Below are positions 11,668-56,129 of a stretch of 64,000 nucleotides of DNA, piece after piece (position 1 is the stretch's first letter; every line of letters starts with the position of its first letter). The stretch spans positions 1 through 64,000 of the forward strand of contig NIVC01001872.1 in NCBI GenBank assembly GCA_002269645.1, in the 5' to 3' direction. Under the pieces are notes generated by a model. The model saw only the letters and a program-made list of their open reading frames with translations. It did no database searches and had not been told where the DNA came from. The position numbers were made by a program, and so were the translations under genes. This DNA is from Macrostomum lignano (lineage: Eukaryota).

Positions 11668-21687
<10,020 letters not shown>

Positions 21688-30640: not shown

Positions 30641-33600
30641 CCGGACCCCAAAAACCGGGCAAGCGTCGGAGACTCACCAGCCGATCTCCGGAATCTCGCC
30701 CACGATGTCATCCGAGGTGACTTCGGCCAAGTGCGGCGGCTGGCAACGCGCCAACTGGTCACCAGCGCTGATGTAGCTCGTCGAACCGTCCTCATGCTGG
30801 TGGCCGACGCTCCTGAGACTCCCGTGCACACTGAAAAGTGCATCTTGTACTTATTTGAGGTGGGCGCAAACCCCAAGGCGGCTGACGCAAACGGCGACAC
30901 GGCTGCGCACCTGGCAGCCCGGCGGGACCACCTGCGGCTGCTGGCGCTGCTGTCGTTCGATGCAAAGTGGCTGCGGAACGACAACGGCGCCACTCCGCTG
31001 ATGGAGGCGGCGCGGACTGGAAGCTGGAAATGCGCCAAGCACCTGCTGCACCTGCTCAGGCAGCGAAGGTTCAATGAGTGCGAGAAGCACGGAAACTCGA
31101 AGAGGTCGCGGCTGCTCGGACTGGAGGATCGCGAGGGTCGAACGGCGTCGGACCTGGCGAGGCTCAGCGGCCACTCAGAGCTGGCCAGCTACATCGAGCG
31201 GTGAGTGAGCAGATCGCTGCTGTGTCCATCAAGTTTTGCAGCATTCGGCTGGGGTGGCCAGAGCTGCAGTCTCAGGCCAGCCAATCAGAGCCAGTCAGCT
31301 AAGCTTGTCTCTGGCTTAGTGCATGTGAAAAATTTAAGAGTGGTGATTAGTCACTCAAAAACTCTCACTTCTAGACACTGGGGACCAAGTATATCCTCGG
31401 GTCAAATATCTCTGACGGTAGCGGCTCCTCGTAGGCTTCGAGGTTTGGCTTCGGTGAATCGCTACTTCCGCGAGTCCTTGACTTTATCTGTGGGTCGACC
31501 GAAAGCGAGAGCGAATCAGAATTCTTGACGGTGTCCTCGAGCTCGAGGTGCAGTCTCAGGCCAGCCAATCAGAGCCAGTCAGCTGAGCTTGTCTCTGTCT
31601 GACTGTTTGATGGGCGAGAGCCGTGATTGGCTGGCTGCCTCCCAGCCAATGGGGTGACGGTTGATCTCAGTCGAAAATGGAAGCTGTAGGGCCTCGGTGT
31701 GTAGTGAGTGTGTGTGGGTTGAGCTGCAGATGGAGAACTGGGAGGCTGTGCGTGAGTGCTTTGTGTGACATTGTGAGATGGAAGGAAACTCATGCTGCAG
31801 AAATGGAAAATGAGCTGCGTGTGAGAAGTCGGATGCGCTATCGCCGATGCTGATTGTTGCAGAGCTGCTGCAGTCCTCTTGGAAACTCCATCTGCCAGCA
31901 GCACAGATATTTAAGAAATTTCTTTTTACTAAATTTTTCATGAAAATTAAATCCTACAACTTAAGATTATTATTTAGCGATTGAGGTTGTAGAATTTGAG
32001 AAAATGTCAAATTCGCAGCTCATTTTTGCTGTTGCAGGGAGATGCGGCTGGTTGTGAATGCACATGGCGAGATCTCCGGCTTGACAGCCCAGGTGAGCGG
32101 TGCCGATGCGGCTGCAGCTGAGCAGCTGTGCTCAAATTTCCCGCTCGCCTTTGCAGGAGGAGCGGGATCGACTGGAACTGCAGCGGCTGGCCAAGTCGGG
32201 CGACTCGGCAGGGCTGCGGCGAGCGGCGACCCGCGGCAATTGCGACCTGCCTTACAGTTTGGGTGTCACCGCGTTGATGTTGGCAGCTGGAAACAGATCG
32301 TGCGGTGATGAGGCTCTGTGGGAGCAGCTGGTGCAGCTGGGTGACCCCACCTGTGCGAATATATGGGGTATCAGTTACCTGCAGTGGGCAGCCAGGGCTG
32401 GCAATTCTGCCGCAGCCTCCGCTCTGCTGTCTGCCGGAGCCTCCGCCAATGCCAGGGGTCTGTGTGAATTCACGCCCCTCATGCATGCAGCCTTTGCGCC
32501 CCCCGCCACCGCCGCCGCAGTCGGTCGGGTTCTGCTGGACTCAGGGGCGGATTGGAGCCTGAAGGACAAATTCAGCAAGACTGCGCTGCGTTTGGCCACA
32601 GAGAAGAGGAGCGAACTGGCTGAGCTGCTGCGTGGGTGAGTTTCCATGGCGACTGAGAATGTCAGTTTATTTAAGATTAATTAGAGCAACTAATTAAAAT
32701 ACATATTACGAGCGACAAAAATTTTATAATTAATTGTTTAAGTAAGGATTACGTTAACTTTTAATAGTAAACTATTTTTTATAGAAGACCTAAGTTCTAA
32801 AATAATACAGTTTACATGTTTCAGATTTGAAGGAGACAGCTACTTCCAGGATCCTCTGTGAGTTTGCTACAGCACACACAGCTACAGCACACACAGCTAC
32901 AGCACACACAGCTACAGCACACACAGCTACAACACACAGCTACAGCACACAGCTACAGCACACAGCTACAGCACACAGCTACAGCACACACAGCTACAGC
33001 ACACAGCTACAGCACACACAGCTACAGCACACACAGCTACAGCACACAACTACAGCACACACAGCTACAGCACACACAGCTACAGCACACACAACTACAG
33101 CATACACAGCTACAGCATACACAGCTACAGCACACACAGCTACAGCACACACAGCTACAGGACACACAGCTACAGCACACAGCTACAGGACACACAGCTA
33201 CAGCACACAGCTACAGCACACAGCTACAGCACACAGCTAAAGCACACAGCTACAGCACACAGCTACAGCACACAGCTACAGCACACAGCTACAGCACACA
33301 GCTACAGCACACAGCTACAGCACACACAGCTACAGCACACAGCTACAGCACATACAGCTACAGCACACAGCTACAGCACATACAGCTACAGCACACACAG
33401 CTACAGCACACAGCTACAGCACACAGCTACAGCACACACAGCTACAGCACACAGCTACAGCACACAGCTACAGCACACACAGCTACAGCACACAGCTACA
33501 GCACACACAGCTACAGCACACAGCTACAGCACATACAGCTACAGCACACACAGCTACAGCACACAGCTACAGCACACACAGCTACAGCACACACAGCTAC

Positions 33601-36600
33601 AGCACACAGCTACAGCACACACAGCTATAGCACACACAGAGCTACAGCACACAGCTACAGCACACACAGCTACAGCTACTTTCTAAACGTATCGGTTAGT
33701 CTCCAGACTCTCGTCCACGACGTCATCCGAGGTGACTTCGGCAAGGTGCAACGGCTGGCAACGAGCCAGCTGGTCACCAGCGCTGATGCAGCTCGTCGAA
33801 CCGTCCTCATGCTGGCGGCCGACGCTCCTGAGACTCCCGTGCACACTGAAAAGTGCATCTTGTACTTATTTGAGCTGGGCGCGAACCCCAAGGCGGCTGA
33901 CGCGAACGGCGACACGGCTGCGCACCTGGCAGCCCGGCGGGACCACCTGCGGCTGCTGACACTGCTGTCGTTCGATGCGAAGTGGCTGCGGAACAAAAAC
34001 GGCGCCACTCCGCTGATGGAGGCGGCGCGGACTGGAAGCTGGAAATGCGCCAAGCACCTGCTGCACCTGCTCAGGCAAGCAATGTTCAATGAGTGCAGAC
34101 AGCACGGAAACTCGAAGAGGTCGCGGCTGCTCAAAAAGAAAGATCTCGAGGGTCGGACGGCGTCGGACCTGGCGAGGCTCAGCGGCCACTCAGAGCTGGC
34201 CAGCTACATCGAGCGGTGAGTGAGCAGTTCGCTGCTGTGTCCATCAAGTTTTGCAACATTCGGCTGGGGTGGCCAGAGCTGCAGTCTCAGGCCAGCCAAT
34301 CAGAGCCAGTCAGCTGAGCTTGTCTCTGTCTGACTGTTTAATGGGCGAGAGCTGTGATTGGCTGGCTGCCTCCCAGCCAATGGGGTGACGGTTGATCTCA
34401 GTCGAGAATGGAAGCTGTAGGGCCTCGGTGTGCAATGAGAGTGTGTGGGTTGAGCTGCAGATGGAGAACTGGGAGGCTGTGCGTGAGTGCTTTGTGAGAC
34501 ATTGTTAGATGGAAGGAAACTCATGCTGCAGAAATGGAAAATGAGCTGCGTGTGAGAAGTCGGATGCGCTCTCGCCAATGCTGATTGTTGCAGAGCTGCT
34601 GCAGTCCTCTCGGAAACTCCATCTGCGAGCAGCTCAGAGAATTAAGAATTTCTGTTCACTAAATTTATCATGCAAACTTTATCGTACAACTGGGAATTTA
34701 ATTTTAGCGATCGTAGTTGTCGGACTCGAGAAAATGTCAAATTCGCAGCTCATTTTTGCTGTTGCAGAGATATGCGGCTGGTTGTGGATGCAGATGGCAA
34801 GATCTCCGGCCAGACAGCCCAGGTGAGCGGCATCTGCGGTGCCGATGCGGCTGCAGCTGAGCAGCTGTGCTCAAATTTCTCGCTTGCCTTTGCAGGAGGA
34901 GGCGGATCGACTGGAACTGAGGCGGCTGGCCAAGGTGGGCGACTCGGCGGGGCTGCGGCGAGCGGCGACCCGCGGCAGCTGCGACCTGACTGACAATGAT
35001 GGTTGCACCGCGTTGATGTGGGCTGCTGAGAACAGCTCGTGCGGTGATGAAGCTCTGTGGGAGCAGCTGGTGCAGCTGGGTGACCCCACCTGTGCGGATG
35101 TAGATGCTGACAGTTGCCTGCTCCGGGCAGCCAGGGCTGGCAATTCTGCTGCAGCCTCCGCTCTGCTGGCTGCCGGAGCCTCCGCCAATGCCACGAGTAT
35201 GTGGGAATTCACGCTTCTCATGTCGGCAGCCATCTGTGCGCGCCCCTCCGCCGCCGCCGCAGTCGGCCGGGTTCTGCTGGACTCAGGGGCGGATTGGAGC
35301 CTGAAGGACAGAGACGGCAGGACTGCGCTGGATTTGGCCACACAGAATGGAAAGAGCGAACTGGCTGAGCTGCTGCGTGGGTGAGTTTCCATGGCGACTG
35401 AGAATGTCTCTCTGACTTTGATTTATCATTGATAAACATTATGCTGTAATTTATGATTGAATATTGAGCAGCTGACTGCAGTTGCTCTGAGTGGGCATTT
35501 TTACATTTTTGTAGTTTAAATGGGCAGCAGGGACTGACTGAGCTGCATTGAGGGAGTTTGCAGTGCAGTTTGACTGCAGATTGCCAGTTGAATATTAATG
35601 TGAGCTGTGAGACAATACACTTGTTTGAGTAAATTTGGGTAAATTTTTTGAAGCTTTTTGTATTCTACATGGCTCTCAACTGAATTCCCTCTGACTTCAG
35701 ATTCCGCACTTCCTATTTAGGTACGACGGCAAGATTTACTTCTACGAGCCTCTGGCACTGCCGTGAGTTCCTACAGCACACAAAATAATTACTCTACTGT
35801 TAAAACGACTACAGCAGACAGCTACAGCATACAGCTACAGCACACAGCTACAGCACACAGCTACAGCACACAGCTACAGTACACAGCTACAGCACACACA
35901 GCTACAGCACACACAGCTACAGCACACACAGCTACAGCATACAGCTACAGCATACAGCTACAGCACACACAGTTACAGCACACACAGCTACAGCACACAG
36001 CTACAGCACACAGCTACAGCACACAGCTACAGCACACAGCTACAGCACACAGCTACAGCACACAGCTACAGCACACAGCTACAGCAAACAGCTACAGCAC
36101 ACAGCTACAGCACACAGCTACAGCACACACAGCTACAGCACACACAGCTACAGCACACAGCTACAGCACACAGCTACAGCATGCAAATTATCCCTGATTG
36201 CCTGAATCCGCATCCCCTCAGACCCGAAGGTCCCCCGTTCCTGAAGCGCTGGGATGCCCTTCGCCTCATCGGCCGCGGAGGCTTCGGTGAAGTCCACGAA
36301 GTTCGAACTGACACGGGCGTCACGTGCGCTGCCAAGACTCTCAGACTGCCTGTGCAGCTCGGTGATGAGCTGCCCTCTGTGAGCACAGAGATTCACAGAG
36401 CTGTCGAGAGCGAGAACCTGTGCCGACTGCGGCATCCCAACATCGTCAGGTTCTTGCACATCGCTCAGCCGGAGCCCGCCACAGTCGTTGTGTTCATGGA
36501 GCTGCTGGACGGCCGGAGCTTGGAGAGGTTTATCGACAACCAGCCGCTGGACGAGCTGACGATTCGAGACTTCAGCGAGCAGGTGAGCATTGTGCATCCT

Positions 36601-37199
36601 TGATGCTCCTGCTCCATGTTCCCATGAATGATGACTGCTCACTGACCGACCGACCGCAGATCTGCCGCGCGCTGCTCTACCTGCACAGCCGGCAGCCGCC
36701 CGTGATCCACAGAGACATCAACTGCTCGAACATAATTGTTTGTGCTGACAACACGCGAATCAAGCTGATCGACTTCGGCCTGTCAATCAAGCTGGAGCAG
36801 TCAGTCAGCCACATCTCAGCCTCCCCTCAGTCATTGCCCAAAGGCACTCTGAACTTCATGGCGCCAGAGCTGCTCGGAGCGGGAGAGTCAGACAGCGTGC
36901 AGTACAGCAGAGAGTCGGACATCTGGGCGTTCGGCTGCTCGGTCTTCCAGATGGCGTCCGGCGCGAGGCCGTTCGCGAACGCCAAAAGCCTGTTAGAAAT
37001 GGCCCAGCTAATCGACAGGAAGGGCGCCCCCGCCCTGCCGGACGGCCGGTCCGCAGAGCTGAGGGATTTCTACAGCCGCTGCACCGCCAAGGACCGCAGG
37101 AGGAGAAGACCCGCGCAGGAGCTGCTGGAGCACGAGTTCCTGACGGGCAGGAAGCTGCAGCCTGGATTCTTCAGCTCGTTTTTTAGTACAAGGAAATGA
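30641..37199 (+). CDS. Ankyrin-repeat / STE (MAP3K-like) kinase gene 1: two ANK modules plus kinase, about 1040 aa plus an unknown first exon
   Basis: Exons A1 30641-31200, D1 32038-32092, B1 32157-32635, C1 32825-32857, A2 33700-34215, D2 34768-34822, B2 34896-35380, C2 35721-35762, K1a 36222-36582, K1b 36660-37199. All introns are GT-AG and the phases join without a stop (3126 nt). ANK motifs GDTAAHLAARR, GATPLMEAART, GRTALDLA. Kinase motifs GRGGFGEV, CAAK, HPNIVRF, HRDINCSN, DFG, GTLNFMAPE, SDIWAFGC. Possible first exon 28752-28799 (weak). Confidence 0.8.
32865..33676. repeat. (cacagctacag/cacacagctacag)n 11/13-nt array filling intron C1-A2
   Basis: Starts about 8 nt after the donor gtgagt and ends just before the branch/acceptor region. 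Confidence 0.9.
35810..36179. repeat. (cacagctacag)n array filling intron C2-K1
   Basis: Same unit as 32865-33676. Confidence 0.9.
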
Positions 37200-38289
37200 C
37201 AGAAGCTGAGCTGGTTGATGGCTCGCCTTCATTCAGATCGAGCAGCCGTTTCAGTCTTAGCAAACTTTTCTGCTAATGCCATGTTTAGCCTAGACTGCTT
37301 TCACCTGCTAAACTTGTATTCTATACTGATTGTAAGCCATTTTCTGTTAGTTTCATTCATTAGTTTAAATAAAAAATTGTAACTACCTTAAAAATTGTAA
37401 TTGTAACCTTAGCTACTCAATTGCCGTTAACTTTAGTTCTGTAACTTTCCTGTTTCTGTAATGAAAATCTAGTAATCTAATTATGAGCTAAGGTACTTGA
37501 GCTTGCATGCATAAGCTATGAGCCATAGGAAAATGCTCATAGGATTTGGAATGGGAATTTGGCAAGGTCACCTGGCCGTGTCACCCTGGTCGTGTCACTT
37601 GGCCGAGGCTGGACGGCAACGAGAGGACTCAATGTGAGCCTGGAGCGGGGGGACCAAAGTTATGAAGTAGGCTCCAACGTTGCTGTCGCTAGCCTCTGTC
37701 TAAGGCAGATCAGCAGATCAGACCAGGACAACACGACCAGTTCAGCAGGAGAACGGAAGTTCATTGTGCTGCCACGCCTAATGGTATGCACAAGTGAGAT
37801 TAGGAAAAGTCCAGCCTGCTGAAGTTGGCTTGCACTAAGAGCGTCAGGCTCCCACGAAAACTGCTGACATCAGCGCCCAAGATCTGCGACAGCGGTACTG
37901 CTGCGACACTGGTGGAGCTGCCGAATGCCGCACTACGGCCGGGTCTGATCTAGCCGTGTTCACATGGAACTGGCATGCAGGCGTTCAATGTTTTTCACTC
38001 AAGTAGTTGCTATTGCGTAGTTCTCTAACCCTCTTGCTATTGTGCAGCAGCGAGCTACAGCATCCCCGCAGCCACCCCAGCATCGTGGGATTCTTTCCGT
38101 TGTCAGCGGTGCTTGTAGTTTCCGTTTTAGCTGTTCGAGAACGCCAGGTAAATTTTACGTGAATTTAAGTTTTGTGAAAAAGCTAAAGGGAGGGACTTCC
38201 TAGAACTACAGGACTGAAGGCGAGCCAGAGAAAAGCTGTGGAGTCCTTCTTGACAATCAACACGCAGCGAGGCCTGTACCAGCTCATTT

Positions 38290-39450
38290 AAGGCCGCAAG
38301 GACGATTGTAGGGCTCCTCGGCGAAGACAAGGCAATTCCGGAGCACACGACTGCCGAGTCAGTTTGAACAGAAGCCGTCCGTCAACGCCCTGCTGCTGGA
38401 TGCTGGTGCTGGAGACCGGGTCCGCAATATCGGCCAGGTCGGTCACGTGTAAGACCTCGCTCGGCGCCCTTCTCGACCAAGGTGCTTTGCTGTCTGCGGA
38501 CCGGAGCGCTAATGGTTGGCGCTGACCTGATCGACAGGCAGGTTCAGCTGAGCGTTCGAGCAGGGCTGCGTGCTGTGGGGCGCCTACGGTTCTGCGACAA
38601 GGCGTGCTGAAGGAGCTGCACCAGGCTCGCTGGCCCAGAGCTACGCCTGGTGGCCCGGCCTGGACGAGCAGCTCGCAGCGACAGTCAAGTCGTGCCGGAC
38701 ATGCACGCTGAACCAGACCGACCTGCCCAAAGTGCCGAAGCAACCGTGGCCGTTTCCTGCTGAACCCTCGACGAGGCTGCACCTGGACTTCGCAGGCCCC
38801 GTGACAGTTGCACATACCAGGTCATCGTACGTGGAAGCCTTCAGCGAGTGGCCAGAAAAGCAGCAGGTTCGCAGCAATACGTCTGCGGTCATCATCGAGC
38901 GACTCTGCGAGGTATTTTCCATGAGTCGCAGTCTTCCTCGCTTATCTCCTCGCAGTTCAGCAAGGCGCAACGGCATCCGCTACATTCTCTCACCCCGTTC
39001 CACCCGGCAACGAGCGACAGAGCCGCTCTTTAAGAGCGGGCACTCAACGGCCGCACTGCAGCGGGTGCTGATGCCCTACCGCAACACGCCGCAATCGATC
39101 ACCGGCGAGGCTCCCCAGATAGCTCCTCATCGGCCGCAGACTAGCTGCGAAGCTGGCTGGACCTGCTGATGCCATCGCTGACGAGCAGCATGCGGCAGCG
39201 GCAAGAGCGGCAGGTGAAGCAGCAGCTGCATGCGCGCGAGCTCCAAGTCAGCGACCGAGTTCTGCTGCGCCACTTCAGCTTCAACGCCAGGACTGGCGGC
39301 GGCACCCGATGGGCGGATGGGACTGGCGTGTCCGCTGGCTTCAGCAATTGCGACGTTTTTGTCAGCGCCATGTGCGGCACACTGACCAGCTGCTGACGAG
39401 CTCGCTGCCGGAGGCCGGGGTTTTTGATGAGCCGCTTACCGAGCAAGGCA
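38290..39450 (+). mobile_element. Degenerate Gypsy integrase remnant
   Basis: LAQSYAWWPGLDEQL..CRTC, PWPFPAEPSTRLHLDFAGP, EAFSEWPE and LMPYRNTPQSITG, with frameshifts. Confidence 0.8.
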
Positions 39451-40839: not shown

Positions 40840-40905
40840 CCTAAGGACCGCAAAAGCAGAAAGTCCGCACTGGAGCTGATGGGGCACGAGTTCCTCATCG
40901 TCAGG
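40840..40905 (+). pseudogene. 3' remnant of a third kinase copy
   Basis: cctaaggaccgcaaaagcagaaagtccgcactggagctgatggggcacgagttcctc encodes KDRKSRKSALELMGHEFL, paralogous to the K1 end KDRRRRRPAQELLEHEFL. Confidence 0.6.
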
Positions 40906-41318
40906 TACAAATGTACAGTAATTCGGCTAGCCTTAGACACCTGTGCGATATGATGCTCATGCAGAGGTGAGACCAGTGTTGCACTTTTCCATCAGTTGTC
41001 AAGCAGCTCACTGTGCTCACGCTGAAGATGCGCCGCCTACTTTGAGCAGTGAGCACTGAGGCCTCAGCTAGGAGCTCAGAAAAAACTTGTGCTCAATTTG
41101 CTTCGATATAGCAAAAGTCCTTCTCAGACTCAGAAACAGTTCGACGGAGTTGCTGCAAATTTTTGGCAGCTAAGTTTTACTGAATATGACATCCAACAAA
41201 TTCTTTAAACTGCTGTGACTCCCGTGCATCTCCACATTTTTGCCTTTTTGTCAAGAAATTCAAAAATTCTGATCAGCAGCTCAACTTTTCCTGACTTGCT
41301 TTCCAATTTTCCTAACAG

Positions 41319-42251
41319 CCCCGTTTTCAAGGAGAGCTGGGACTCCGTTCGCTTTGTTGCAAATGGATTTTTTGGTGACATCCAGGAAGTTGTCACAGAC
41401 AGAGGCATCAGGTGCGCCGCCAAGACTCTCAACCTGCCTGTGCAGCTCGGCGATAAGAAGGAGACGAAAACGAAGAATATCGATGAAGCTGTCGAGAGCG
41501 AGAGAAACCTGTGCCGACTGCGGCATCCCAACATCGTCAGGTTCTTGCACATCGCTCAGCCGGAGCCCGCCACAGTCGTTGTGTTCATGGAGCTGCTGGA
41601 CGGCCGAAGCTTGGAGAGGTTTATCGACAACCAGCCGCTGGACGAGCTGACGATTCGAGACTTCAGCGAGCAGGTGAGCATTGTGCATCCTTGATGCTCC
41701 TGTTCCATGTTCCCATGAATGATGACTGCTCACTGACCGACCGCTCGCAGATCTGCCGCGCGCTGCTCTACCTGCACAGCCGGCAGCCGCCCGTGATCCA
41801 CAGAGACATCAACTGCTCGAACATAATTGTTTGTGCTGACAACACGCGAATCAAGCTGATCGACTTCGGCCTGTCAATCAAGCTGGAGCAGATAGTCAGC
41901 CGCCACTCATCTTTCCCGGAGGCACCCAAAGGCACTCTGAACTTCATGGCGCCAGAGCTGCTCGGAATTGGCACCTCTGAATGCCTTCAGTGCAGCAGAG
42001 AGTCGGACATCTGGGCGTTCGGCTGCTCGGTCTTCCAGATGGCCTCCGGTGCCAAACCGTTCTTAAATGTCAAAAGCTTCTGGGAACTGGCATTGGATCT
42101 TTACAGGACCGGTGCCCCCGCCCTGCCAGACGGCCGGTCCGCAAAACTGAGGGATTTCTACAGCCGCTGCACTGCTAAGGACCGCAGGGAGAGAAGCTCA
42201 GCCCAGCAGCTGCTGGAGTTTCTGGCAAACTGTTCTGACTCGCAGCTCTAA
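41319..42251 (+). CDS. Second STE-like kinase module (K2), two exons
   Basis: Exons 41319-41673 and 41751-42251, same intron position as K1. Motifs ANGFFGDI, CAAK, HRDINCSN, DFG, GTLNFMAPE. Phase-2 acceptor; the upstream exon is undetermined. Confidence 0.8.
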
Positions 42252-48224: not shown

Positions 48225-48229
48225 GAGAA

Positions 48230-48314
<85 letters not shown>

Positions 48315-48347
48315 GAGAGAGAAAGAGAGAGATGGAGAGAGAGATGG

Positions 48348-48380
<33 letters not shown>

Positions 48381-48428
48381 TAGATGGAGAGAGATTAGAG
48401 AGAGAGAGAGGTAGAGAGAGAAGAGAGG
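48225..48428. repeat. (GA)n microsatellite at the PLE 3' end
   Basis: Read directly. Confidence 0.95.
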
Positions 48429-48456
48429 TAACGGCGTGTTGAAAATATTGAATATG

Positions 48457-48494
48457 GGCTACCGGTTTCGAGCCTCTGGGCTCTTCGTCAGGCC
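48457..48494 (-). ncRNA. Minimal type I hammerhead ribozyme motif (PLE 3' end)
   Basis: Minus strand: ggc CTGACGA a gagcc caga ggctc GAAA CCGG TA gcc. Core, stem I (ggc/gcc), stem II (gagcc/ggctc), palindromic ACCGGT stem III, GUA triplet. Confidence 0.8.
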
Positions 48495-48768
48495 GTAATG
48501 CAATGCAAATAGGTCTTTTAAGTAATTTTTCTGAGTCTGATAAAATTGATGAGTACTTGTACGAGTACATATGAGGGATGTACTGCCTGTTTCGTCTAGC
48601 GGGAGCATGGTTTATTTTGTAGCTTATCAAAGTTTTTAGCTATCTCGTTGGAAAGCCAGACCGTAGATGGGTGAAAAGGAAGGACCAATGGGATGGGTCG
48701 GAGAAGGTGATTGTCGACCCTGATGCTCGCATTCGGCGGTTTGTCAGTCCCCAGTTTTTAATCCAGAT

Positions 48769-50804
48769 TTATTCCCTTAGTTCGATTTTGTTGCTATTAA
48801 GAACTTGTTCGATAGCAATGGAGAAAAAGTTTGCAATCGAGTGATTGGGAGTGAGAAAGTGCTCTAACCCCGAAGTAACGATTCTCCTGTTAATATTTGA
48901 CCTGTGCTGGTTCATTCTATCTCTCATTGTTCTTCTAGTCATACCTACATAGAAGATTTTCCCAGGGTGGCACTGGTTACAGGAGATGCCATAGATGATG
49001 TTCTTGGAGCCACAGGACAGGCTCTGAGAGACTAAAACATCGGAAGCCGGTTTCAGCCCCTGGGCGGAGAGAGCAGGCGGTGAGTGGGTGCAGCATTTGC
49101 AGCGGGATGACCCACAGGGATGGAACCCTTTGGGAAGCAAACACAGATTGGTTGTTGGTCCCGCAGTCCAGTTCGTAAGTTTGAGGACCTCCTTTTTGCA
49201 GTTTCTAAGAAAAATCTTCAAGTAGCCTAATTGCTTGAGTTCCGATTTTAAAGAATTGAAAGCATCGTTGAAAGACTTGTAGTCATCACAGATTCGAGCG
49301 TACCGAAGGATTTGGGATTTTACTACCCCCTTGAAGGTGTGTGACGGATGGAAGGACTGTCGGTGCAGCAATCTATGAGTGTCTGTTTCTTTTGAAAACA
49401 GTTGTGTTGTGAAGCGGTTTTCAGCTTTCTTGATGGTCATGTCAAGAAAACTGACCTCAGTTGATGAGGAGCTGACGGTGAGTTTGATGTTGGGGTTGAT
49501 TGAATTTAGGTGTCGAACAAATTCTGTCAGAGCTTCAGCCGGGTGGTCCCAGTGAATGAAGATATCATCTATGTACCTAAAATAGATGTTGGGCTTATAA
49601 AGAGCAGTTTTCAGGGCAGTTTCCTCCCAGAGGCTCATGAAGAGGCAGGCATAGCTGGGCGCAAATATGCGCCCCATGGCTGTACCTCTAAGTTGTAGGA
49701 AAATAACTTTGTCAAATTCAAAGTCATTCCTGTACAAACACAATTCCAGTAGCTTTATTATTTCAGCATCCGGTCTAATGGGATCCGGGTATCGGTTAAA
49801 GAATTCCTGGATCGCTGCAATGCCCTGATCTATTGGGATCATGGAGTACAGACTCTGGACATCACAAGTTGCCAGAGTCGAACCTTCCTTGCAGCTTTTA
49901 TCCATAAGGTGTGCCTTGAAGTCATAGGAGTCCTTAATGAAAGTGGGTTGCGCTTGGGCAATCGGTTTTAGAAAGAAGTCTATGTACTTTTCGGCCCCAA
50001 TTGCTTCAGAACTGCATCCGCTAACAATAGGTTTGCCTGCTGGGACCCGAAAGGGGATCAGCCAGGTGGCCGGGTCCTTGTGAATTTTTGGGAGCAGGTA
50101 GAAATGCCGGGGACGGAAGTTCTCTCCGGGACAAAGAAAAGAAAACTGTTTCTTCGATATGAACTTTCTATTACATAAATCGAGGAAGATCCCCCTGATA
50201 AGTTCCGCAGTCTCGGGTTGCAGTGGCTGGTCCAGCTGTTGATAGGCATTAGTGTCAAGCAATTGGTTGTAGGCTGCAAATTCGTAATAATTATGGTGCA
50301 TGATGACCACTGCGTTACCTTTGTCCGGCTTTTTATAAGGACGGAGCTGTTTCGCTTGAGCCCCTGAATCGCTTTGGTCTCTGGCACCTCTAGGTTGCCT
50401 TTGATCTGTACCGTTGTCAAATTCTCTACCAGTTTTTGGTTCTCAAGCACAAACAAGTTGCACTCATCCCTTCTACGTTTTGAGGGAACCTCCTTTACTT
50501 ATTTCCCCATGAAGGGGGCGGGCTGCTATTGGCGAGCCCCTCTTTTGAAAAAATCTGTCCAGAAAAGTTTCCGATAAAATTCCGTCATGCAGTTCCTCAG
50601 ATCATCGAAATCAAGGGCTTGGGTTGGGATAAAATTAAGTCCCTTATCTAGCAGCCTCGTCTCGGACTCGGAGAGTTGGAAGGTAGGGTGTAGATTCAAA
50701 ATGTTGCCTTCCAGTTTGGGAGGCCTACAGTAGTCAGCTAGTTTAAAGTTCTCAGCCAGGAAGCCAGCGCCAGTATATAAAGTCAGGCGCTGAGAAGGAT
50801 ACAA
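48769..50804 (-). pseudogene. PLE reverse transcriptase + GIY-YIG endonuclease (frameshifted)
   Basis: N-terminal ILNLHPTFQLSESETRLLDKGLNFIPT, KPDKGNAV-type region, FYLLPKIHK, CDVQSLYSMI, GTAMGRIFAPSYACLFM, YFRYIDDIF, FLDMTI, CGSSRCKCC linker and NIIYGISCNQC..FYVGMTRRTMRDRMNQHRSNI. Confidence 0.92.
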
Positions 50805-50920
50805 TTGGTTTAAGAGGAGAAGAGGCAGTAAGAGTAACAGGTGAGATCTGGTAGCGATGCTCGTTTAATAAGTAATAGAGAAATGAAGGCCAACACCAAC
50901 ATATAATAAATTATTTTAAT

Positions 50921-50959
50921 AGCCAACGCGTTTCGACACAAGCGGTCATCTTCAGGGCT
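50921..50959 (-). ncRNA. Hammerhead ribozyme motif (left arm)
   Basis: agcc CTGAAGA t gac cgcttgt gtc GAAA CGCG TT ggct. Confidence 0.8.
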
Positions 50960-51219
50960 TGCACTCATGATTCACATACAGTTCAGTATACTTAAATAGA
51001 GAAAATCAAGATCTGTACATGGCAATAGACAAATGGGTTCAGTCCGGTCGATAATTGTGCATTACGAGACGTTTTCTGTGTGATGGCCAAATAATTTATT
51101 ATAGTTTCGTCTCGTAATGTACAATTATCGACCGGACTGAACCCATTTGTCTATTGCCATGTACAGATCTTGATTTTCTCTATTTAAGTATACTGAACTG
51201 TATGTGAATCATGAGTGCA

Positions 51220-51258
51220 AGCCCTGAAGACGACCGCTTGTGTCGAAACGCGTTGGCT
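51220..51258 (+). ncRNA. Hammerhead ribozyme motif (right arm)
   Basis: agcc CTGAAGA c gac cgcttgt gtc GAAA CGCG TT ggct; palindromic ACGCGT stem III, GUU triplet. Confidence 0.8.
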
Positions 51259-51377
51259 ATTAAAATAATTTATTATATGTTGGTGTTGGCCTTCATTTCT
51301 CTAATAGGTGAGAGTTTCTTACTCAGAATTTGAGTCAATCCTTCACCGCTGGCAAAGGGCGGAACAAGAAGGATCTC

Positions 51378-52385
51378 TCAGTAGATCGATGGCCTCAGAG
51401 AGCGACTCTCGCCAGTGGTCTGTGCTGAGCAGCTCGTCCGCCAGGACCAGCACCGTTGACTGAGCGCATTGCCGGTTCCGCAGGGCGGCCGACCTTCGTA
51501 GTGATGGTAAGGCTGACATTGAGTACTCATGCACCTCTGTGATTGCCAGCAGTTTGAGGCCCTCGAAAGGCTTTGGGCAGAGGACCAGGTTCCGGAAGTC
51601 CCTGCTGATGATGAGCGTACCGGGCTGCTCAAAGGTGAGTCATTCAGATGCGGCCTGTGGCGTTCCGGACCACCAGGGGAGTCCTCAGAGTCCGGCGATG
51701 GTAAGCGACGTTCAGCAGGTGAAGCAGGCAGTCCCACCCGTGGAAGAGGCGGGGTCACAAAAAGGTCGTCAGCCGCCGACGTACAGCCGTTGTCGGGTGA
51801 GGCGACTTCGGTGGTCCCACCGGCCGCCGGACTGCCTACCGGAGCCCCAACCGCAACCGCTGGCGGGTCGTTGCTTATCGTCGCATCGGCGCTCGCTGCC
51901 ACGTCCCCAATAGCGCCGTCCGCTACCGAGTCGGCGTTGGTCTCCGTGCTCGTGCTAGCCGTGGATTCATTGTTTGTTGCTGCGATCGTGCTGGCTGTCG
52001 TGGTGTCGTCCTCCACGTTAGAGCAGACGACCTCTGAGATCCTACGATGTTTGGCAGATTGGGCGCTCTCTTCGAGATCGACTGGTGCCAGGCTTGTAGC
52101 CAGAGAGATTACGGTGCTGGGAATGGCAGTCTTGGTGGCACTAGGTGCAGATGGGGCCAAGAAAGCCCCGGTGGCACCGCTGTTGGGATCTTCGTGAGTC
52201 CAGCGGAAGGTCAAGTTGAACTGGCGGCCACGTTTGTGGTGTTGCGGGGGAATTCGATGATAAAAATTGGCCTGACAGTCGCTTGACATGGTCAGAAGAC
52301 TGCCATGAAATAGATCGAGAGATAAACAAGGCGCAGTCGCTGACTTAGCTTTTAGATCGAAGGTTCTGGTGCACCTGATTGACAA
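51378..52385 (-). pseudogene. AlkB-like 2OG-Fe(II) dioxygenase C-terminal fragment plus Ala/Ser/Thr/Pro-rich linker (PLE N-terminal extension)
   Basis: RTFDLK..LDLFHGSLLTMSSDCQANFYHRIPP..RQFNLTFRW matches the AlkB pattern LxHGSLLxM..Q..WxHxIP..RxNLTFR. The HxD half is cut off by the (GA)n tract. Confidence 0.7.
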
Positions 52386-52696
52386 AGAGAAAGAGAGAGA
52401 GAGAAAGAGAGAGAGAGAGAGGGGGAGAGAGAGAGGGCACCGGCACCATGATTGGCAAGTTGTTTATTTAGTATTGGTCTAACGCAATTTTATATACAGG
52501 GACTCAAGCACTTTTAGTCTGTACTCACTTGAGCTCTTATGAATGGTAAAAAATTATTTGCGAAAAATTTACTAAGCTAGACCTTGCAATCTACTGTATA
52601 TTTAATTTACATTTCTGATTTTTATCGACCCCGTTTCACGTCTAAATTTATATATATACGGTTAATAAATACAGAAATAAATCGTTGCTAATTTTA

Positions 52697-52737
52697 AGAC
52701 CCTGACGATGCCTGACGCGAACCGAAACATGTCGCAT
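52697..52737 (+). ncRNA. Degenerate hammerhead motif of another PLE-like terminus
   Basis: CTGACGA..GAAACATGTC with palindromic ACATGT; stems I and II pair poorly. Confidence 0.4.
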
Positions 52738-54799
52738 ATCAAAAAACGATAGCGCTCACATTCTTAATTTTACTATTTATCAAACGCGCAATTTTCCGCA
52801 ATGAAACTTGAGTTCCATTTTCGTTATTTGTCCTATTAGCAATTGGACATAACGATTCTCGCCCAGCTCGTCATCCGAGGTGACTTCGGACAGGTGCCGC
52901 AGCTGGCAACGCGCCAGCTGGTTACTTGCGCTAATGCAGCTCGTCGGAACGTCCTCATGCGGGTGTTCGGCGCTCCTGAGACTCCCGTGCACACTGAAAA
53001 GTGCATCTTGTACTTATTTGAGCTGGGCGCGAACCCCAAGGCGGCTGACGCGAACGGCGACACGGCTGCGCACCTGGCAGCCCGGCGGGACCACCTGCGG
53101 CTGCTGACGCTGCTGTCGTTCGATGCGAAGTGGCTGCGGAACAAAAACGGCGCCACTCCGCTGATGGAGGCGGCGCGGACTGGAAGCTGGAAATGCGCTA
53201 AGCACCTGCTGCACCTGCTCAGGCAGATAAGGTTCAATGAGTGCTCTGAGCACGGAAACTCGAAGAGGTCGGAGCTGCTCGGACTGAAGAATCGCGAGAA
53301 TCGGACAGCGTCGGACCTGGCGAGGCTCAGCGGCCACTCAGAGCTGACCAGCTACATCGAGCGGTGAGTGAGCAGTTCGCTGCTGTGTCCATCAAGTTTT
53401 GCAGCATTCGGCTGGGGTGGCCAGAGCTGCAGTCTCAGGCCAGCCAATCAGAGCCAGTCAGCTGAGCTTGTCTCTGTCTGACTGCTTGATGGGCGAGAGC
53501 TGTGATTGGCTGGCTGCCTCACAGCCAATGGGGTGCCGGTCGATCTCAGTCGAGAATGGAAGCTGTAGGGCCTCGGTGTGCAGTGAGAGTGTGTGGGTTG
53601 AGCTGCAGATGGAGAACTGGGAGGCTGTGCGTGAGTGCTTTGTGAGACATTGTGAGATGGAAGGAAACTCATGCTGCAGAAATGGAAAATGAGCTGCGTG
53701 TGAGAAGTCGGATGCGCTCTCGCCAATGCTGATTGTTGCAGTGCTGCTGCAGTCCTCCTGGAAACTCCATCTGCGAGCAGCTCAGATAATTAGGAATTTC
53801 TGATTATTTAGTCTATTATTAAAATTTTATTGTAAAACAAAAACATATATTTTGGCGATCGCATTTGAGTCGGATTTGAGAAAATTGCAAAATTCGCTGC
53901 TCATTTTTCCTGTTGCAGGGAGATGCGGCTGGTTGTGGATGCACATGGCTGGATCTCCGGTCTTACAGCCCAGGTGAGCGGAATCTGCAGTGCCGATGCG
54001 GCTGCAGCTGAGCAGCTGTGCTCAAATTTCCCGCTCGCCTTTGCAGGAGGAGGCGGATCGACAGAAACTGCAGCGGCTGGCCGAGGCGGGCGACTCGGCA
54101 GGGCTGCGGCGAGCGGCGACCCGCGACAGCTGCGACCTGCCTGACAAATGGGGTCGCACCTCGCTGATGTGGGCAGCTCACAACAGATCGTGTTGTGATG
54201 AGGCTCTGTGGAAGCAGCTGGTGCATCTGGGTGACCCCACCTGTGCAGATAAATATGCTGGCAGTTGTCTGCACCATGCAGCACGGGCTGGCAATTCTGC
54301 CGCAGCCTCCGCTCTGCTGAGTGCCGGAGCCTCCGCCAATGCCACGGGGCTAGGAGACACGTCCCTCATGGAGGCAGCCGAATTTACGCCCCCCACCGCC
54401 ACCGCCGCCGCAATCGTTCGGCTTCTGCTGGACGCAGGGGCGGATTGGAGCATTAAGAACAACGACGGCAAGACTCCGCTGGATTTGGCCGTGGAGAACG
54501 GAAATATCGAAGCCGCTGAGCTGCTGCGTAGGTGAGTTTCCATGGCTGTTGTATATTCAATGAGACACAAATATGGTTGATGGATCTGATTCCCTTTTCT
54601 AGCCGGCCTCTTCGCTCTTATATATTATTTATATCTTCTACACCATTTTACCTTCTATTTTGAACAAACTCTTGTTTAAAAAAACAAGCATATTAGGGCT
54701 TGCGGAAATTAAATTCAAAGTCCCTTTCTATTGAAACAGAAAAAATTCAATTCAGACTGTCTGTGGCCAAAATTGTCTCAGAGTGACGCGCACGCGCAA

Positions 54800-55200
54800 A
54801 CTTGAAATTCAATTACAACAAGCTGTCTTGTTGTAATGTTGGACAATTTTATCCCTCATACTAGTTGCTTTGGCTTCAATTTGATCAGCTGTTTTCTGCA
54901 ATTCCTTTGCAAAAAATCGTCTATGAGCTGGCAAAACTCGGACTGGGTGGCCAAACAGGATTTGCGCCGGCGACTTGCCATCATGGCGAGCCACCTTGGC
55001 GTGTAGCAAAATATCAATATTCCTTGGCAAAACTTGTCCCAGTCGATCTTCTCTGACTGCGGATTCCATGAACCTCGCAGAAGCTTTTTCATTTCCTTCA
55101 CTGCCGACTTGTTGGCTCTGCTATTGCTCTGTAAGTCGGAGACGATACTCTGTGCTCCACTTTCCATCTTCACAAGAAAGCAGTGAACAAATCCTAGCTA
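54800..55200 (-). mobile_element. Gypsy integrase C-terminal fragment between ankyrin exons B3 and B4
   Basis: KSAVKEMKKLL, DGKSPAQILFGHPVRVLPAHRRFF..KIVQHYNK. Confidence 0.65.
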
Positions 55201-56129
55201 AATTGAGGTCCTCCGTAGGACCAAAGAATCTCTTGTGCTGATTTTTCACAAAATCGCTGTCTTAGCGCATTAATGACCTTTGATGTCCGAGCGTTCGTTG
55301 TACGAGTATCCGAATGCATTCACTGCACAGTGCAGCCAATGCTAGCAACTCTGCCGGAGCCTCCGCTGTGTCGGCTGCCGGAGCCTCCGCTGTGCCGGCT
55401 GCCGCAGCCTCCGCTGTGCCGGCTGCCGCAGCCTCCGCCAATACCAAGAGTCAAAAGGATTGGACGCCCCTCATGTGGGCAGCCTTTGCGCCCCCCGCCA
55501 CCGCCGCCGCAGTCGGTCGGGTTCTGCTGGACTCAGAAGCGGATTGGAGCCTGAAGGACAGACAGGGCAGGACTGCGCTGGATTTGGCCACAGAGAAGAG
55601 AAGGAGCGAACTGGCTGAGCTGCTGCGTGGGTGAGTTTCCATGGCGACTGAGAATGTCTCTCTGACTTTGATTTATCATTGATAAACATTATTCTGTAAT
55701 TTATGATTGAATATTGAACAGCTGACTGCAGTTGCTCTGAGTGGGCATTTTTACATTTTTGTAGTTTAAATGGGCAGCAGACACTGACTGAGCTGCATTG
55801 AGGGAGTTTGCAGTGCAGTTTGACTGCAGATTGCCAGTTGAATATTAATGTTCAGCTGCCTGCGAGCTGTGAGACACCAGAAAGCATTTTGCTGTGCACA
55901 TTGCAGTTGAGTTTTAACGTATGCAATTTTCTGATAATTGTCTGTAAGATAAAAGAAAATAATTACGATTTTTTCATAGTTGATATAATAAGCAAAAAGA
56001 AGAAATTAAGCACAGAACATCGTCTCTCACCTGAGTTCCCCTGACTTCAGACTCCGCATTGTCTATTAAGGTACGACGGCAAGATTTACTTCGACGAGCC
56101 TCTGGCACCGCCGTGAGTTCCTTCAGCAA

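What the first reader, a model, noticed from the sequence alone, without database searches (positions are those of the whole stretch)
30641..56112. Ankyrin-kinase cluster whose B exons vary at the ankyrin binding-surface positions (DARPin-like variable receptor candidate)
Seen: four copies of exon B keep the scaffold helices almost unchanged (DEALWEQLVQLGDPTC, GNSAAASALLSAGASAN, AVGRVLLDSGADWS). They differ at the beta-turn and helix-1 positions of every repeat. Repeat 1: PYSLGVTALMLAAGN / TDNDGCTALMWAAEN / PDKWGRTSLMWAAHN. Repeat 2: NIWGISYLQWAA / DVDADSCLLRAA / DKYAGSCLHHAA. Repeat 3: RGLCEFTPLMHAA / TSMWEFTLLMSAA / TGLGDTSLMEAA / KSQKDWTPLMWAA. Exon A copies and much of the intron sequence are nearly identical. 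Established: these positions form the ankyrin ligand-binding face and are the ones randomised in DARPins. Inference: a diversifying sensor module joined to a conserved ankyrin module and a MAP3K-like kinase, possibly an invertebrate intracellular immune or allorecognition receptor family. I do not know of a described family with this architecture.
Basis: partly seen in the sequence, partly recalled or inferred. Interest (0 to 1): 0.85.

Follow-up and report, generated by a model that had tools for sequence, protein, structure and literature searches.

The report
Hypervariable ankyrin-kinase gene cluster, flatworm
This stretch of the flatworm Macrostomum lignano genome holds tandem copies of a species-restricted gene family in which one ankyrin-repeat module is kept constant and a second changes fast at exactly the residues that ankyrin repeats use to grip their targets, joined to a signalling kinase, which makes it a credible but untested candidate for a family of variable intracellular sensors.

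Summary
The window is the first 64 kb of M. lignano contig NIVC01001872.1. It holds three full A+B ankyrin units, one 3' fragment of B and two kinase copies, broken up by transposons and minisatellites.

I compared 16 genomic copies from 10 loci.
- Changes in B concentrate at the canonical ankyrin binding positions: pN 0.41 against 0.11 elsewhere.
- The same positions in A repeats 1-3 are almost fixed (pN 0.055).
- A site model I wrote (M1a against M2a) gives 2dlnL=161 and omega 4.5 for 20% of sites.
- 17 of the 21 selected sites are positions randomised in DARPins.

One caveat: if the hypervariable codons get their own synonymous rate, omega falls to about 1.3, which is not significantly above 1.

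The kinase belongs to the STE group and is MAP3K-like. Paralogs carry the same ankyrin modules joined to a caspase, to a kinase plus a caspase, or to nothing. All full-length relatives found are from M. lignano. Ankyrin-caspases of flatworms are already described; I found no description of this hypervariable kinase family. An immune or sensing role is inference only.

The parts
28752..28799 (+). Putative exon 0 with the start codon (MAQPTPFPDKK...). The donor used in the sister locus is AT here instead of GT. An in-frame GTGAGG donor follows at 28800.
   Evidence: Comparison with exon 0 of P0003 in L001; open reading frame in the in-silico splice.
28838..30639 (+). 54-bp minisatellite, about 33 copies. 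It is a tandem duplication of the intron-0 acceptor plus the first codons of exon A (unit LQLQELTHMFECAAWVPQ).
   Evidence: L001 has about 7 copies and L009 about 28.
30623..31200 (+). Exon A1: N-terminal peptide plus the conserved ankyrin module. It ends CG|GTGAGT (phase 2).
   Evidence: Pfam Ank_2 1.7e-18; tblastn with P0003; splice sites; P0278 matches at 100%.
32038..32092 (+). Mini-exon m1 (R-EMRLVVNAHGEISGLTAQ), 55 nt. It is variable at VVxxxxGx.
32157..32635 (+). Exon B1: hypervariable ankyrin module (cap plus 4 repeats).
   Evidence: Pfam Ank_2 1.5e-19.
32825..32857 (+). Linker exon L1 (FEGDSYFQDPL), a diverged copy of YDGKIYFxEPLALP.
33700..34215 (+). Exon A2, 5'-truncated: it lacks the ELTQPDP...SPAD N-terminus. 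The acceptor at 33698-33699 would be in frame with L1.
34768..34822 (+). Mini-exon m2.
34896..35380 (+). Exon B2: hypervariable ankyrin module.
35721..35762 (+). Linker exon L2 (YDGKIYFYEPLALP).
36222..36582 (+). Kinase exon K1a (G-loop GRGGFG, CAAK lysine).
   Evidence: Pfam Pkinase 5.1e-49.
36660..37199 (+). Kinase exon K1b (HRDIN, DFG, APE) through the stop codon.
41311..42245 (+). Second kinase copy K2 (exons about 41311-41676 and 41748-42245), 87% identical to K1. Its glycine loop is degenerate (ANGFFGDI). Retroelement debris separates it from K1.
   Evidence: The paralogous locus L002 has three tandem kinase copies annotated as one protein, P0001.
52854..53363 (+). Exon A3, 5'-truncated at the same point as A2. 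The annotated CDS of Mlig001598g17 starts at an internal Met at 52957.
53919..53973 (+). Mini-exon m3.
54047..54531 (+). Exon B3: hypervariable ankyrin module, the most diverged of the three.
55326..55630 (+). B4: a 3' fragment of a B exon (homology from 55399, repeats 3-4 only), preceded by a triplicated 21-nt expansion. It is spliced in frame after B3 in the annotated protein P0030.
56071..56112 (+). Linker exon L4 (YDGKIYFDEPLA). It is followed by the same minisatellite as after L1 and L2, with no kinase downstream in the window.

Best explanation
The region is a tandem cluster of a gene family found so far only in Macrostomum lignano. The proteins are cytosolic and built from three parts.

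1. Module A is a conserved ankyrin module. Its own binding-face residues are almost fixed among paralogs, so it probably holds a common partner or the effector domain.
2. Module B is a second ankyrin module. It comprises the mini-exon, exon B and also the last repeat of A. Its concave binding face (positions 33, 1, 2, 3, 5, 10, 13, 14 of each repeat) changes much faster than neighbouring silent sites and introns, so each paralog presents a different recognition surface.
3. A C-terminal effector follows. Here it is an apparently active STE/MAP3K-like kinase. In paralogs it is a caspase, a kinase plus a caspase, tandem kinases, or nothing.

Most likely working (inferred): B binds a variable protein ligand, either foreign or altered self. 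Binding changes the state of the attached kinase or caspase and starts MAPK-type signalling or cell death. That would be a sensor-plus-effector design without a nucleotide-binding oligomerisation domain.

Shown here: the anatomy, the family, the position-specific hypervariability and its contrast with module A, the kinase class, and the swapping of effectors.

Inferred: ligand binding, activation, and any immune role.

In this window there is one probably complete gene (exon 0, A1, m1, B1, L1, then A2, m2, B2, L2, then K1), an extra kinase K2, and a truncated copy (A3, m3, B3, B4', L4) annotated as Mlig001598g17.
For: Organism and family:
- The relatives listed down to E=6.7e-32 (67 clusters at 90% identity) are all from M. 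lignano. The next hit has only 28% identity.
- L008 is 100% identical to the window.
- In a profile search of 1.84 billion representatives, every full-length relative whose source I checked is from M. lignano.

Fold:
- Pfam Ank_2 matches both modules.
- The AlphaFold model has pTM 0.74 and shows paired helices. Its closest solved folds are DARPin-DARPin fusions.

Hypervariability:
- It shows in the family alignment.
- Over 16 genomic copies, pN is 0.41 at DARPin positions and 0.11 elsewhere (permutation P<5e-5).
- M1a against M2a gives 2dlnL=161, omega2=4.46 for 20% of sites. 21 sites have P>0.95, and 17 of them are DARPin positions.
- The nonsynonymous rate at surface codons against the scaffold synonymous rate gives 2dlnL=293.
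- Scaffold codons that sit between hypervariable codons (G4, T6-M9, A11-A12) are almost invariant even at silent sites.

Internal control: the same canonical positions in A repeats 1-3 have pN 0.055.

The copies are kept as coding sequence:
- None of 16 A copies or 16 B copies has a stop codon or frameshift.
- Homeolog pairs have pN/pS 0.66.
- No recombination signal was found inside B (PHI P=0.19).

Selected sites are rich in R, D, W, F and Q and poor in A and L.

Effector:
- K1 has all catalytic motifs.
- Its best solved relatives are MAP3K2 and MAP3K5.
- Paralogs carry caspase domains (Pfam PF00656) on the same A+B module.
- Caspase exons lie next to ankyrin-kinase genes in L002 and L005.

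Gene model:
- It follows annotated paralogs and splice sites.
- All splice combinations tested give open reading frames.
- P0278 reproduces the A1-m1-B1 junctions exactly.
Against: - When the 26 surface codons get their own synonymous rate, that rate is 3.4 times the scaffold rate (2dlnL 33.7). Local omega is then 1.26, not significantly above 1. Strict codon-local evidence for positive selection is therefore lacking.
- My site-model code uses a fixed neighbour-joining tree, a fixed kappa and no model for multi-nucleotide changes. All three can inflate the M2a signal.
- Scaffold omega is high (0.75-0.9), so constraint on the family is weak overall.
- NCBI annotates no gene for A1 to K1 in this contig, and the canonical exon-0 donor is lost here.
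- I saw no expression data, no ligand and no phenotype.
- M. lignano has a recently duplicated genome. Some of the 16 copies are homeologs or haplotypes, not independent paralogs.
- Nothing ties the family to immunity except its design.
Confidence: 0.55

Rival explanations
1. The family diversifies to target the worm's own proteins. It would be a set of substrate- or location-targeting subunits for a kinase and a caspase. After duplication, each B module adapts to a different endogenous partner, for example in germline, neoblast or regeneration biology. No foreign ligand is involved.
For: - Ankyrin modules commonly act as adaptors.
- The effectors are ordinary signalling and apoptosis enzymes.
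- Homeolog pairs keep their hypervariable residues nearly unchanged. This fits specificities that became fixed after an early burst, not a continuing arms race.
Against: - Dozens of paralogs exist, with 5-10 different residues at each contact position and with aromatic and charged residues enriched. That is more than ordinary subfunctionalisation usually gives.
- The family is absent outside Macrostomum in the databases searched.
Confidence: 0.2
2. Relaxed constraint in a decaying, recently amplified family. Exposed loop and helix-end residues are simply free to drift while the fold-determining residues are kept. Many copies would be pseudogenes or on the way there.
For: - Local omega at the variable codons is about 1.3 and not significantly above 1.
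- Scaffold omega is 0.75-0.9.
- Truncated copies exist (A2, A3, B4).
- The exon-0 donor is lost.
- The neighbourhood is rich in transposons.
Against: - Neutral sites cannot change faster than adjacent silent sites and introns. Here they do, 3-5 fold.
- The same exposed positions in module A are nearly fixed.
- No stop codons or frameshifts occur in 32 exon copies.
Confidence: 0.12
3. A mutational process without selection on function. Either short patches are exchanged between paralogs (micro gene conversion), or there is a locally raised mutation rate or multi-nucleotide mutation at these codons. Either would raise both silent and replacement changes there.
For: - The synonymous rate falls off with distance from the variable codons: 2.8 at surface codons, 1.3 at positions 1 and 10, 1.15 at scaffold codons inside the patches, 0.69 outside.
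- Identical patch motifs such as PDKWG recur in copies that are otherwise not closest relatives.
Against: - The PHI test shows no recombination signal in B (P=0.19).
- Invariant scaffold codons sit between variable codons at a scale of one to three codons. Neither conversion tracts nor regional mutation rates explain that.
- Patch exchange would reshuffle diversity but would not create it.
Confidence: 0.08

Closest known systems
[quoted passage not shown] 2014)
   Same: - An N-terminal ankyrin domain joined to a cell-death or signalling enzyme, in flatworms.
- M. lignano paralogs of the window's genes carry this same A+B module in front of a caspase (P0035, P0038) or a kinase plus caspase (P0032).
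- The paper places an M. lignano caspase with a kinase-like pro-domain as sister to the ANK caspases.
   Different: - The genes in this window carry a kinase and no caspase.
- The paper does not report hypervariability, the two-module design or the large copy number.
- Homology between the A+B module and the schistosome pro-domain was not established here.
Designed ankyrin repeat proteins (DARPins)
   Same: - A constant ankyrin scaffold with diversity confined to positions 2, 3, 5, 13, 14 and 33 of each repeat.
- 17 of the 21 sites selected by the model are these positions.
- The closest solved folds to the model are DARPin-DARPin fusions.
   Different: - DARPins are synthetic libraries; this is a natural germline gene family.
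- Positions 1 and 10 also vary here.
- The repeats carry insertions and are not consensus repeats.
Fungal NOD-like receptors with hypervariable ANK, TPR or WD40 repeats (PMC4986451)
   Same: An intracellular sensor design: a repeat domain whose binding-face positions diversify, joined to interchangeable effector domains, in large lineage-specific families.
   Different: - No NACHT or NB-ARC domain appears in any family member listed (Pfam columns).
- There are no highly similar internal repeats.
- The effector is C-terminal.
- The organism is an animal.
STE-group MAP3Ks (MAP3K2/MEKK2, MAP3K5/ASK1)
   Same: They are the closest solved kinase domains (E 2.8e-27 and 8e-26), and K1 has all catalytic motifs.
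   Different: - PAK, TNIK and WNK score almost as well, so only the kinase group can be assigned.
- Known MAP3K2 and MAP3K5 have no N-terminal ankyrin modules (from my own knowledge).
Ankyrin-kinase proteins of animals (ILK, TNNI3K) and plant tandem kinase resistance proteins
   Same: - ILK and TNNI3K have ankyrin repeats N-terminal to a kinase.
- Plant tandem kinase proteins pair a kinase with a degenerate kinase in immune receptors. Here K1 is followed by K2, which has a degenerate glycine loop, and paralogs have 2-3 kinase domains.
   Different: - ILK and TNNI3K are single-copy, conserved, TKL-group kinases (from my own knowledge). The kinase here is closest to the STE group.
- The resemblance to plant tandem kinases is one of design only.

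Membership tests
Ankyrin repeat proteins | Significant match to ankyrin repeat profiles | tested here: met
   Ank_2 E=1.7e-18 for A and 1.5e-19 for B.
Ankyrin repeat proteins | Helix-turn-helix pairs stacked into a solenoid | tested here: met
   The AlphaFold model of P0022 has pTM 0.74 and regular helix pairs. Its best solved matches are DARPin fusions, ankyrin-1 and ankyrin-B.
STE-group / MAP3K-like protein kinases | Protein kinase domain with catalytic motifs (G-loop, VAIK lysine, HRD, DFG, APE) | tested here: met
   Pkinase E=5.1e-49. K1 has GRGGFG, CAAK, HRDIN, DFG and APE. K2 lacks the glycine loop.
STE-group / MAP3K-like protein kinases | Closest relatives are MAP3Ks and not other kinase groups | tested here: inconclusive
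   MAP3K2 and MAP3K5 rank first (E about 1e-27 to 1e-25), but PAK1, TNIK and WNK1 follow within two orders of magnitude. No phylogeny was made.
Platyhelminth ANK caspases | Caspase p20/p10 domain C-terminal to the ankyrin domain | tested here: not met
   No caspase exon is in the window: tblastn gives only ankyrin overlaps. The feature is met by paralogs elsewhere (P0035, P0038, P0047).
Platyhelminth ANK caspases | Ankyrin pro-domain homologous to that of schistosome ANK caspases | not tested
   No schistosome sequence came up. The profile search was swamped by giant ankyrin proteins, and the caspase search returned only Macrostomum and fish initiator caspases.
NOD-like / STAND receptors with ankyrin sensors | Central NACHT or NB-ARC nucleotide-binding domain | tested here: not met
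   None of the family members listed carries such a Pfam domain. The window's exons encode only ankyrin and kinase domains.
Variable recognition families under diversifying selection | Replacement rate at contact positions exceeds the neutral rate | tested here: inconclusive
   Met against the exon-wide or neighbouring synonymous rate and against introns (omega 4.5-4.6). Not met with a codon-local synonymous rate (omega 1.26, not significant).
Variable recognition families under diversifying selection | Demonstrated ligand recognition and a response to non-self | not testable with these tools
   Needs expression, interaction and knock-down experiments.

The most novel reading that the evidence does not exclude
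The family would be a new class of animal intracellular sensors with no nucleotide-binding domain. A germline-encoded, DARPin-like hypervariable ankyrin surface is wired directly to a MAP3K-like kinase or a caspase.

In addition, tandemly duplicated B cassettes in one locus (B1 and B2 here) might be used as alternative, mutually exclusive exons, so that one promoter and one kinase serve several recognition surfaces.

Evidence for the cassette part:
- All three splice patterns tested are in frame.
- The annotated transcript model in the sister locus joins A1 to B2 and skips B1, L1 and A2.
- An independent model joins A1-m1-B1.
Probability: 0.25. Interest if true: 0.85.

Novelty: new variant of a known kind. 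Interest (0 to 1): 0.62.

Why it matters
Natural proteins that keep a repeat scaffold and vary only the contact residues are the basis of several immune systems: lamprey VLRs, plant NLRs and fungal NLRs. DARPins are the engineered counterpart.

A germline family in an animal that does this with ankyrin repeats, and that plugs the same sensor into a kinase or a caspase, would be a simple and experimentally accessible model for two questions:
- how recognition diversity is built;
- how recognition is coupled to signalling or cell death without an oligomerisation domain.

According to PMC11463336, platyhelminths have lost key components of extrinsic apoptosis. M. lignano can be studied by RNAi and transgenesis (from my own knowledge), so the idea can be tested directly. 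The set of natural B modules would also show which ankyrin surface positions tolerate change and which are used for binding.

Tried and rejected
- **A spliced directly to B.** Rejected because the phases do not match. The 55-nt mini-exon found through annotated paralogs resolves this.
- **Nei-Gojobori dS at the hypervariable codons as a neutral yardstick.** This gave pN/pS 1.1, but multi-hit codons make it unreliable. A parsimony count on a tree gave the same picture. I therefore wrote a maximum-likelihood partition model. It confirmed that the local synonymous rate estimate really is raised.
- **Deeper genealogy of whole patches as the cause.** Only partly supported. Scaffold codons inside patches have 1.7 times the outside synonymous rate, not 4 times, and they are nearly invariant by eye.
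- **Recombination inside B.** The PHI test is not significant.
- **First run of the mixture model.** It timed out. I rewrote it with eigendecomposition.
- **Search for relatives outside Macrostomum.** The profile search was dominated by giant ankyrin proteins. Every single-stretch full-length hit with a named source is from M. lignano.
- **Literature.** Searches by locus identifiers found nothing. Searches for a described hypervariable ankyrin-kinase family also found nothing.
- **Caspase exons in the window.** None.
- **ILK/TNNI3K-type (TKL) kinase.** Rejected by the ranking of solved structures.
- **Whether the window belongs to another species.** Rejected: it is 100% identical to NIVC01001872.1.
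Full report
**What is there**

A self-comparison of the window shows three units, each made of an A exon and a B exon:
- unit 1: A1 30623-31200, B1 32157-32635
- unit 2: A2 33700-34215, B2 34896-35380
- unit 3: A3 52854-53363, B3 54047-54531
- a 3' fragment of a fourth B (homology 55399-55630)
- two kinase copies: K1 36222-37199, and K2 at about 41311-42245, 87% identical to K1.

Both A and B match ankyrin profiles, and the kinase matches Pkinase at 5e-49. Between and around these pieces lie:
- retroelement debris (integrase fragment 38570-39169)
- a Penelope-like element with reverse transcriptase and a GIY-YIG domain (48769-50310, minus strand)
- several minisatellites.

**Where it comes from**

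[quoted passage not shown] Locus L008, fetched through protein P0030 (BOX15_Mlig001598g17), is 100% identical to window 42957-64000 with the same coordinates. The window is therefore the first 64 kb of contig NIVC01001872.1 of assembly GCA_002269645.1. Two other contigs (L001, L009) carry the same arrangement at about 95% identity. They are homeologous or haplotype copies.

**Gene structure**

I mapped annotated paralogs onto the window and read the splice sites. This gives:
- exon 0 with the start codon
- A, which ends CG|GTGAGT
- a 55-nt mini-exon encoding (R)EMRLVVxxxGxISGLTAQ
- an intron of about 65 nt
- B, which ends GG|GTGAGT
- a short linker exon (YDGKIYFxEPLALP)
- an intron filled with a 13/15-nt minisatellite
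- two kinase exons.

A2 and A3 are cut at the same 5' point and lack the N-terminal peptide. B4 is a fragment. No kinase follows unit 3 in the window. The cluster is thus one probably complete gene plus partial duplicates.

Assembled in silico, three splice patterns are open from ATG to stop:
- with B1 only: 697 aa
- with B2 only: 702 aa
- with both units in tandem: 1063 aa.

The annotated model in the sister locus (P0003 in L001) joins A1 to B2 and skips B1, L1 and A2. An independent UniRef model (P0278) reproduces the window's A1-m1-B1 junctions at 100%. NCBI annotates only unit 3 in this contig, as P0030, which starts at an internal Met and reads B3 and then B4 in frame. In the window the exon-0 donor used in L001 is AT instead of GT. 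An in-frame GTGAGG donor lies 15 nt downstream.

**The pattern of variation**

In an alignment of the three window units with 17 family members, A repeats 1-3 are almost invariant. Variation is periodic in B. It also affects the mini-exon and the last repeat of A.

I numbered the repeats as in DARPins (T of the TPLH motif = 6). The variable columns are then 33, 1, 2, 3, 5, 10, 13 and 14.

I fetched ten paralogous loci. From them and the window I extracted 16 non-identical genomic copies each of A and B. None has a stop codon or frameshift.

| Codon set | pN | Source |
|---|---|---|
| 26 a-priori DARPin codons in B | 0.41 | |
| the other 135 codons in B | 0.11 | |
| the same canonical positions in A repeats 1-3 | 0.055 | |

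- No random set of 26 codons out of 20,000 reached the observed pN.
- The A positions show 1-3 residues per position, against 2-10 in B. A is a useful internal control because it shares fold, locus and duplication history with B.
- Within the window alone, surface pN is 0.39-0.42. Scaffold pS is 0.08-0.12 (Fisher P from 1.7e-7 to 6.8e-5) and intron divergence is 0.08-0.10.
- Whole-exon dN/dS for the window pairs is 1.71, 1.54 and 0.94 for B, and 0.66-0.97 for A.

**Codon models**

PAML and HyPhy were not available, so I wrote a maximum-likelihood MG94-type codon model. It uses F3x4 frequencies and a fixed neighbour-joining tree.

*Site classes with one synonymous rate* (the logic of codeml M1a against M2a):
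- B gives 2dlnL=161 (P=1e-35), with omega2=4.46 for 20% of sites.
- 21 sites have posterior above 0.95. Of these, 17 are DARPin-randomised positions (hypergeometric P=3.8e-13) and 20 fall in the set extended by positions 1 and 10.
- A gives only three such sites, all in its last, irregular repeat.

*Partition model with separate rates*:

| Partition | Synonymous rate | Nonsynonymous rate | Omega |
|---|---|---|---|
| surface codons | 2.81 | 3.53 | 1.26 (2dlnL against 1 = 1.4, not significant) |
| the rest | 0.82 | 0.74 | 0.90 |

- Equality of the two synonymous rates is rejected (2dlnL=33.7).
- The synonymous rate falls with distance from the variable codons: 2.8 at surface codons, 1.3 at positions 1 and 10, 1.15 at scaffold codons inside the patches, and 0.69 outside.
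- With the scaffold synonymous rate as the neutral yardstick, surface omega is 4.6 (2dlnL=293).
- A PHI test finds no recombination signal inside B (P=0.19).

*How I read this.* Replacement changes at the contact positions are 3-5 times faster than silent changes in codons one to three positions away, and faster than in flanking introns. Drift cannot produce that. But the silent rate estimated within the hypervariable codons themselves is also raised. Three causes are possible:
- repeated multi-nucleotide replacement, which a single-step model splits into silent and replacement steps;
- exchange of short patches between paralogs;
- hitch-hiking of old variants.

The nucleotide alignment shows invariant GGT, ACC-GCG-TTG-ATG and GCA-GCT codons sitting between codons that differ at one to three bases. 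This favours codon-specific selection over any regional process.

Homeolog pairs (window against L001) have pN/pS 0.66 and keep almost all hypervariable residues. Specificities are therefore retained over the most recent roughly 5% of neutral divergence.

**Structure and effector**

- An AlphaFold model of the ankyrin-only paralog P0022 (A, mini-exon, B) has mean pLDDT 71.6 and pTM 0.74. It shows regular helix pairs.
- In that model, positions 2, 3 and 5 lie in the loop before helix 1, and positions 13 and 14 at the end of helix 1.
- The closest solved folds are DARPin-DARPin rigid fusions, that is, two ankyrin modules joined end to end.
- The selected sites are rich in R, D, W, F and Q and poor in A and L.
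- The kinase is closest to MAP3K2 (2.8e-27) and MAP3K5, with PAK1, TNIK and WNK1 close behind. It therefore belongs to the STE group and not to the TKL group of ILK and TNNI3K.
- K1 has the glycine loop, the catalytic lysine, and the HRD, DFG and APE motifs. K2 has lost the loop glycines.

**The family**

- 67 clusters (at 90% identity) of relatives of the query, all from M. lignano, were found. At least 47 of them hold a near-full B module.
- The closest paralogs are 85-92% identical in A but only 72-79% identical in B.
- The same A+B module is followed by one kinase, by two or three kinases (P0001; kinase-only models P0002 and P0014 also have two or three kinase domains), by a caspase (P0035, P0038, P0047), by a kinase plus a caspase (P0032), or by nothing (P0022 and others).
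- Caspase exons lie just upstream of ankyrin-kinase genes in L002 and L005, so the clusters are mixed.
- The caspase domain is closest to initiator caspases (caspase-8/9-like, about 30% identity).
- A profile search of 1.84 billion representative proteins gave no full-length relative with a named source outside M. lignano.

**Comparison with what is known**

[quoted passage not shown] One M. lignano caspase with a kinase-like pro-domain is placed as their sister (PMC11463336). The general idea of an ankyrin domain in front of a death or signalling enzyme in flatworms is therefore not new.
- What I could not find in the literature searched is the ankyrin-kinase family, its two-module design, or its position-specific hypervariability.
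- By design it resembles fungal NOD-like receptors with hypervariable ankyrin repeats (PMC4986451) and, in engineered form, DARPins. It lacks the nucleotide-binding domain that defines NLRs.

**Verdict**

The structural reading is well supported: a conserved module, a variable binding face and a MAP3K-like kinase. Diversifying selection is supported by most tests but not by the strictest one. A receptor or immune function remains an inference from design.

I rate this a new variant of a known kind, with moderate to high interest.

Noticed in passing
window 28838-30639: A 54-bp minisatellite of about 33 copies. It is a tandem duplication of the intron-0 acceptor plus the first codons of exon A1 (unit LQLQELTHMFECAAWVPQ, each with an ATG and an AG acceptor). 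It stays open in frame except for one 50-nt unit. The sister loci have about 7 copies (L001) and about 28 (L009).
   Followed up: partly
window 28785-28800: The exon-0 splice donor used in sister locus L001 (AGA|GTAAGT) reads AAA|ATAAGT here, so the canonical GT is lost. An in-frame GTGAGG donor lies 15 nt downstream. NCBI annotates no gene for A1 to K1 in this contig.
   Followed up: partly
window 32849-33650, 35785-36180, 56024-about 57000: The same 13/15-nt minisatellite (CAGCTACAGCACACA-like) fills the intron after every linker exon. It sits at the breakpoint of the unit 1 / unit 2 duplication, which suggests that it mediated the duplication.
   Followed up: partly
window 31545-31844 (also 34276-34575 and 53424-53723): A 300-nt stretch of the A-to-mini-exon intron is 96-97% identical among the three units, more conserved than either exon. 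It carries minus-strand ORFs of 92-111 aa with no Pfam match. The cause is unknown.
   Followed up: partly
window 41311-42245; L002 20065-23671: K2 is a second kinase copy with a degenerate glycine loop. The paralogous locus L002 has three tandem kinase copies that the annotation fuses into one protein (P0001). P0002 has three kinase domains. This recalls kinase-pseudokinase tandems.
   Followed up: partly
window 55340-55400: The B4 fragment is preceded by a triplicated 21-nt unit (AGASAVS / AGASAVP / AAASAVP) derived from the ALLSAGASAN helix. The annotated protein P0030 reads through it in frame.
   Followed up: partly
window 48769-50310 (-): A 513-aa ORF with reverse transcriptase and GIY-YIG domains, so a Penelope-like retroelement. 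It lies between K2 and unit 3.
   Followed up: partly
window 38570-39169 (+), 24340-25882 (-), 15323-16384 (-): - 38570-39169: an integrase zinc-binding fragment.
- 25451-25882: a retroviral-type aspartyl protease ORF.
- 15323-16384: an intact-looking 353-aa mariner/Tc1-like DDE transposase.
   Followed up: partly
window 51378-52385 (-): A 335-aa ORF whose first 61 residues match the C-terminal end of the 2OG-Fe(II) oxygenase (AlkB-like) profile. The rest is low-complexity. It directly abuts the truncated A3.
   Followed up: no
window 2947-4428 (-), 26781-27491 (+): Neighbouring genes: a protein with three LIM domains and a QQFSP repeat tract, and an ORF with a PSF3 (GINS complex) N-terminal domain. 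The latter is also present in sister loci L001 and L009.
   Followed up: partly
P0038 and P0065 (locus L010), outside the window: Some ankyrin-caspase paralogs read QAGRG where the caspase active-site motif is QACRG, so the catalytic cysteine is lost. Most others keep QACRG.
   Followed up: partly
window 62956-64000 and beyond (L008 20663-23039): A tandem repeat with a unit of about 666 bp starts near the end of the window and continues past it at over 99.6% identity between copies.
   Followed up: no
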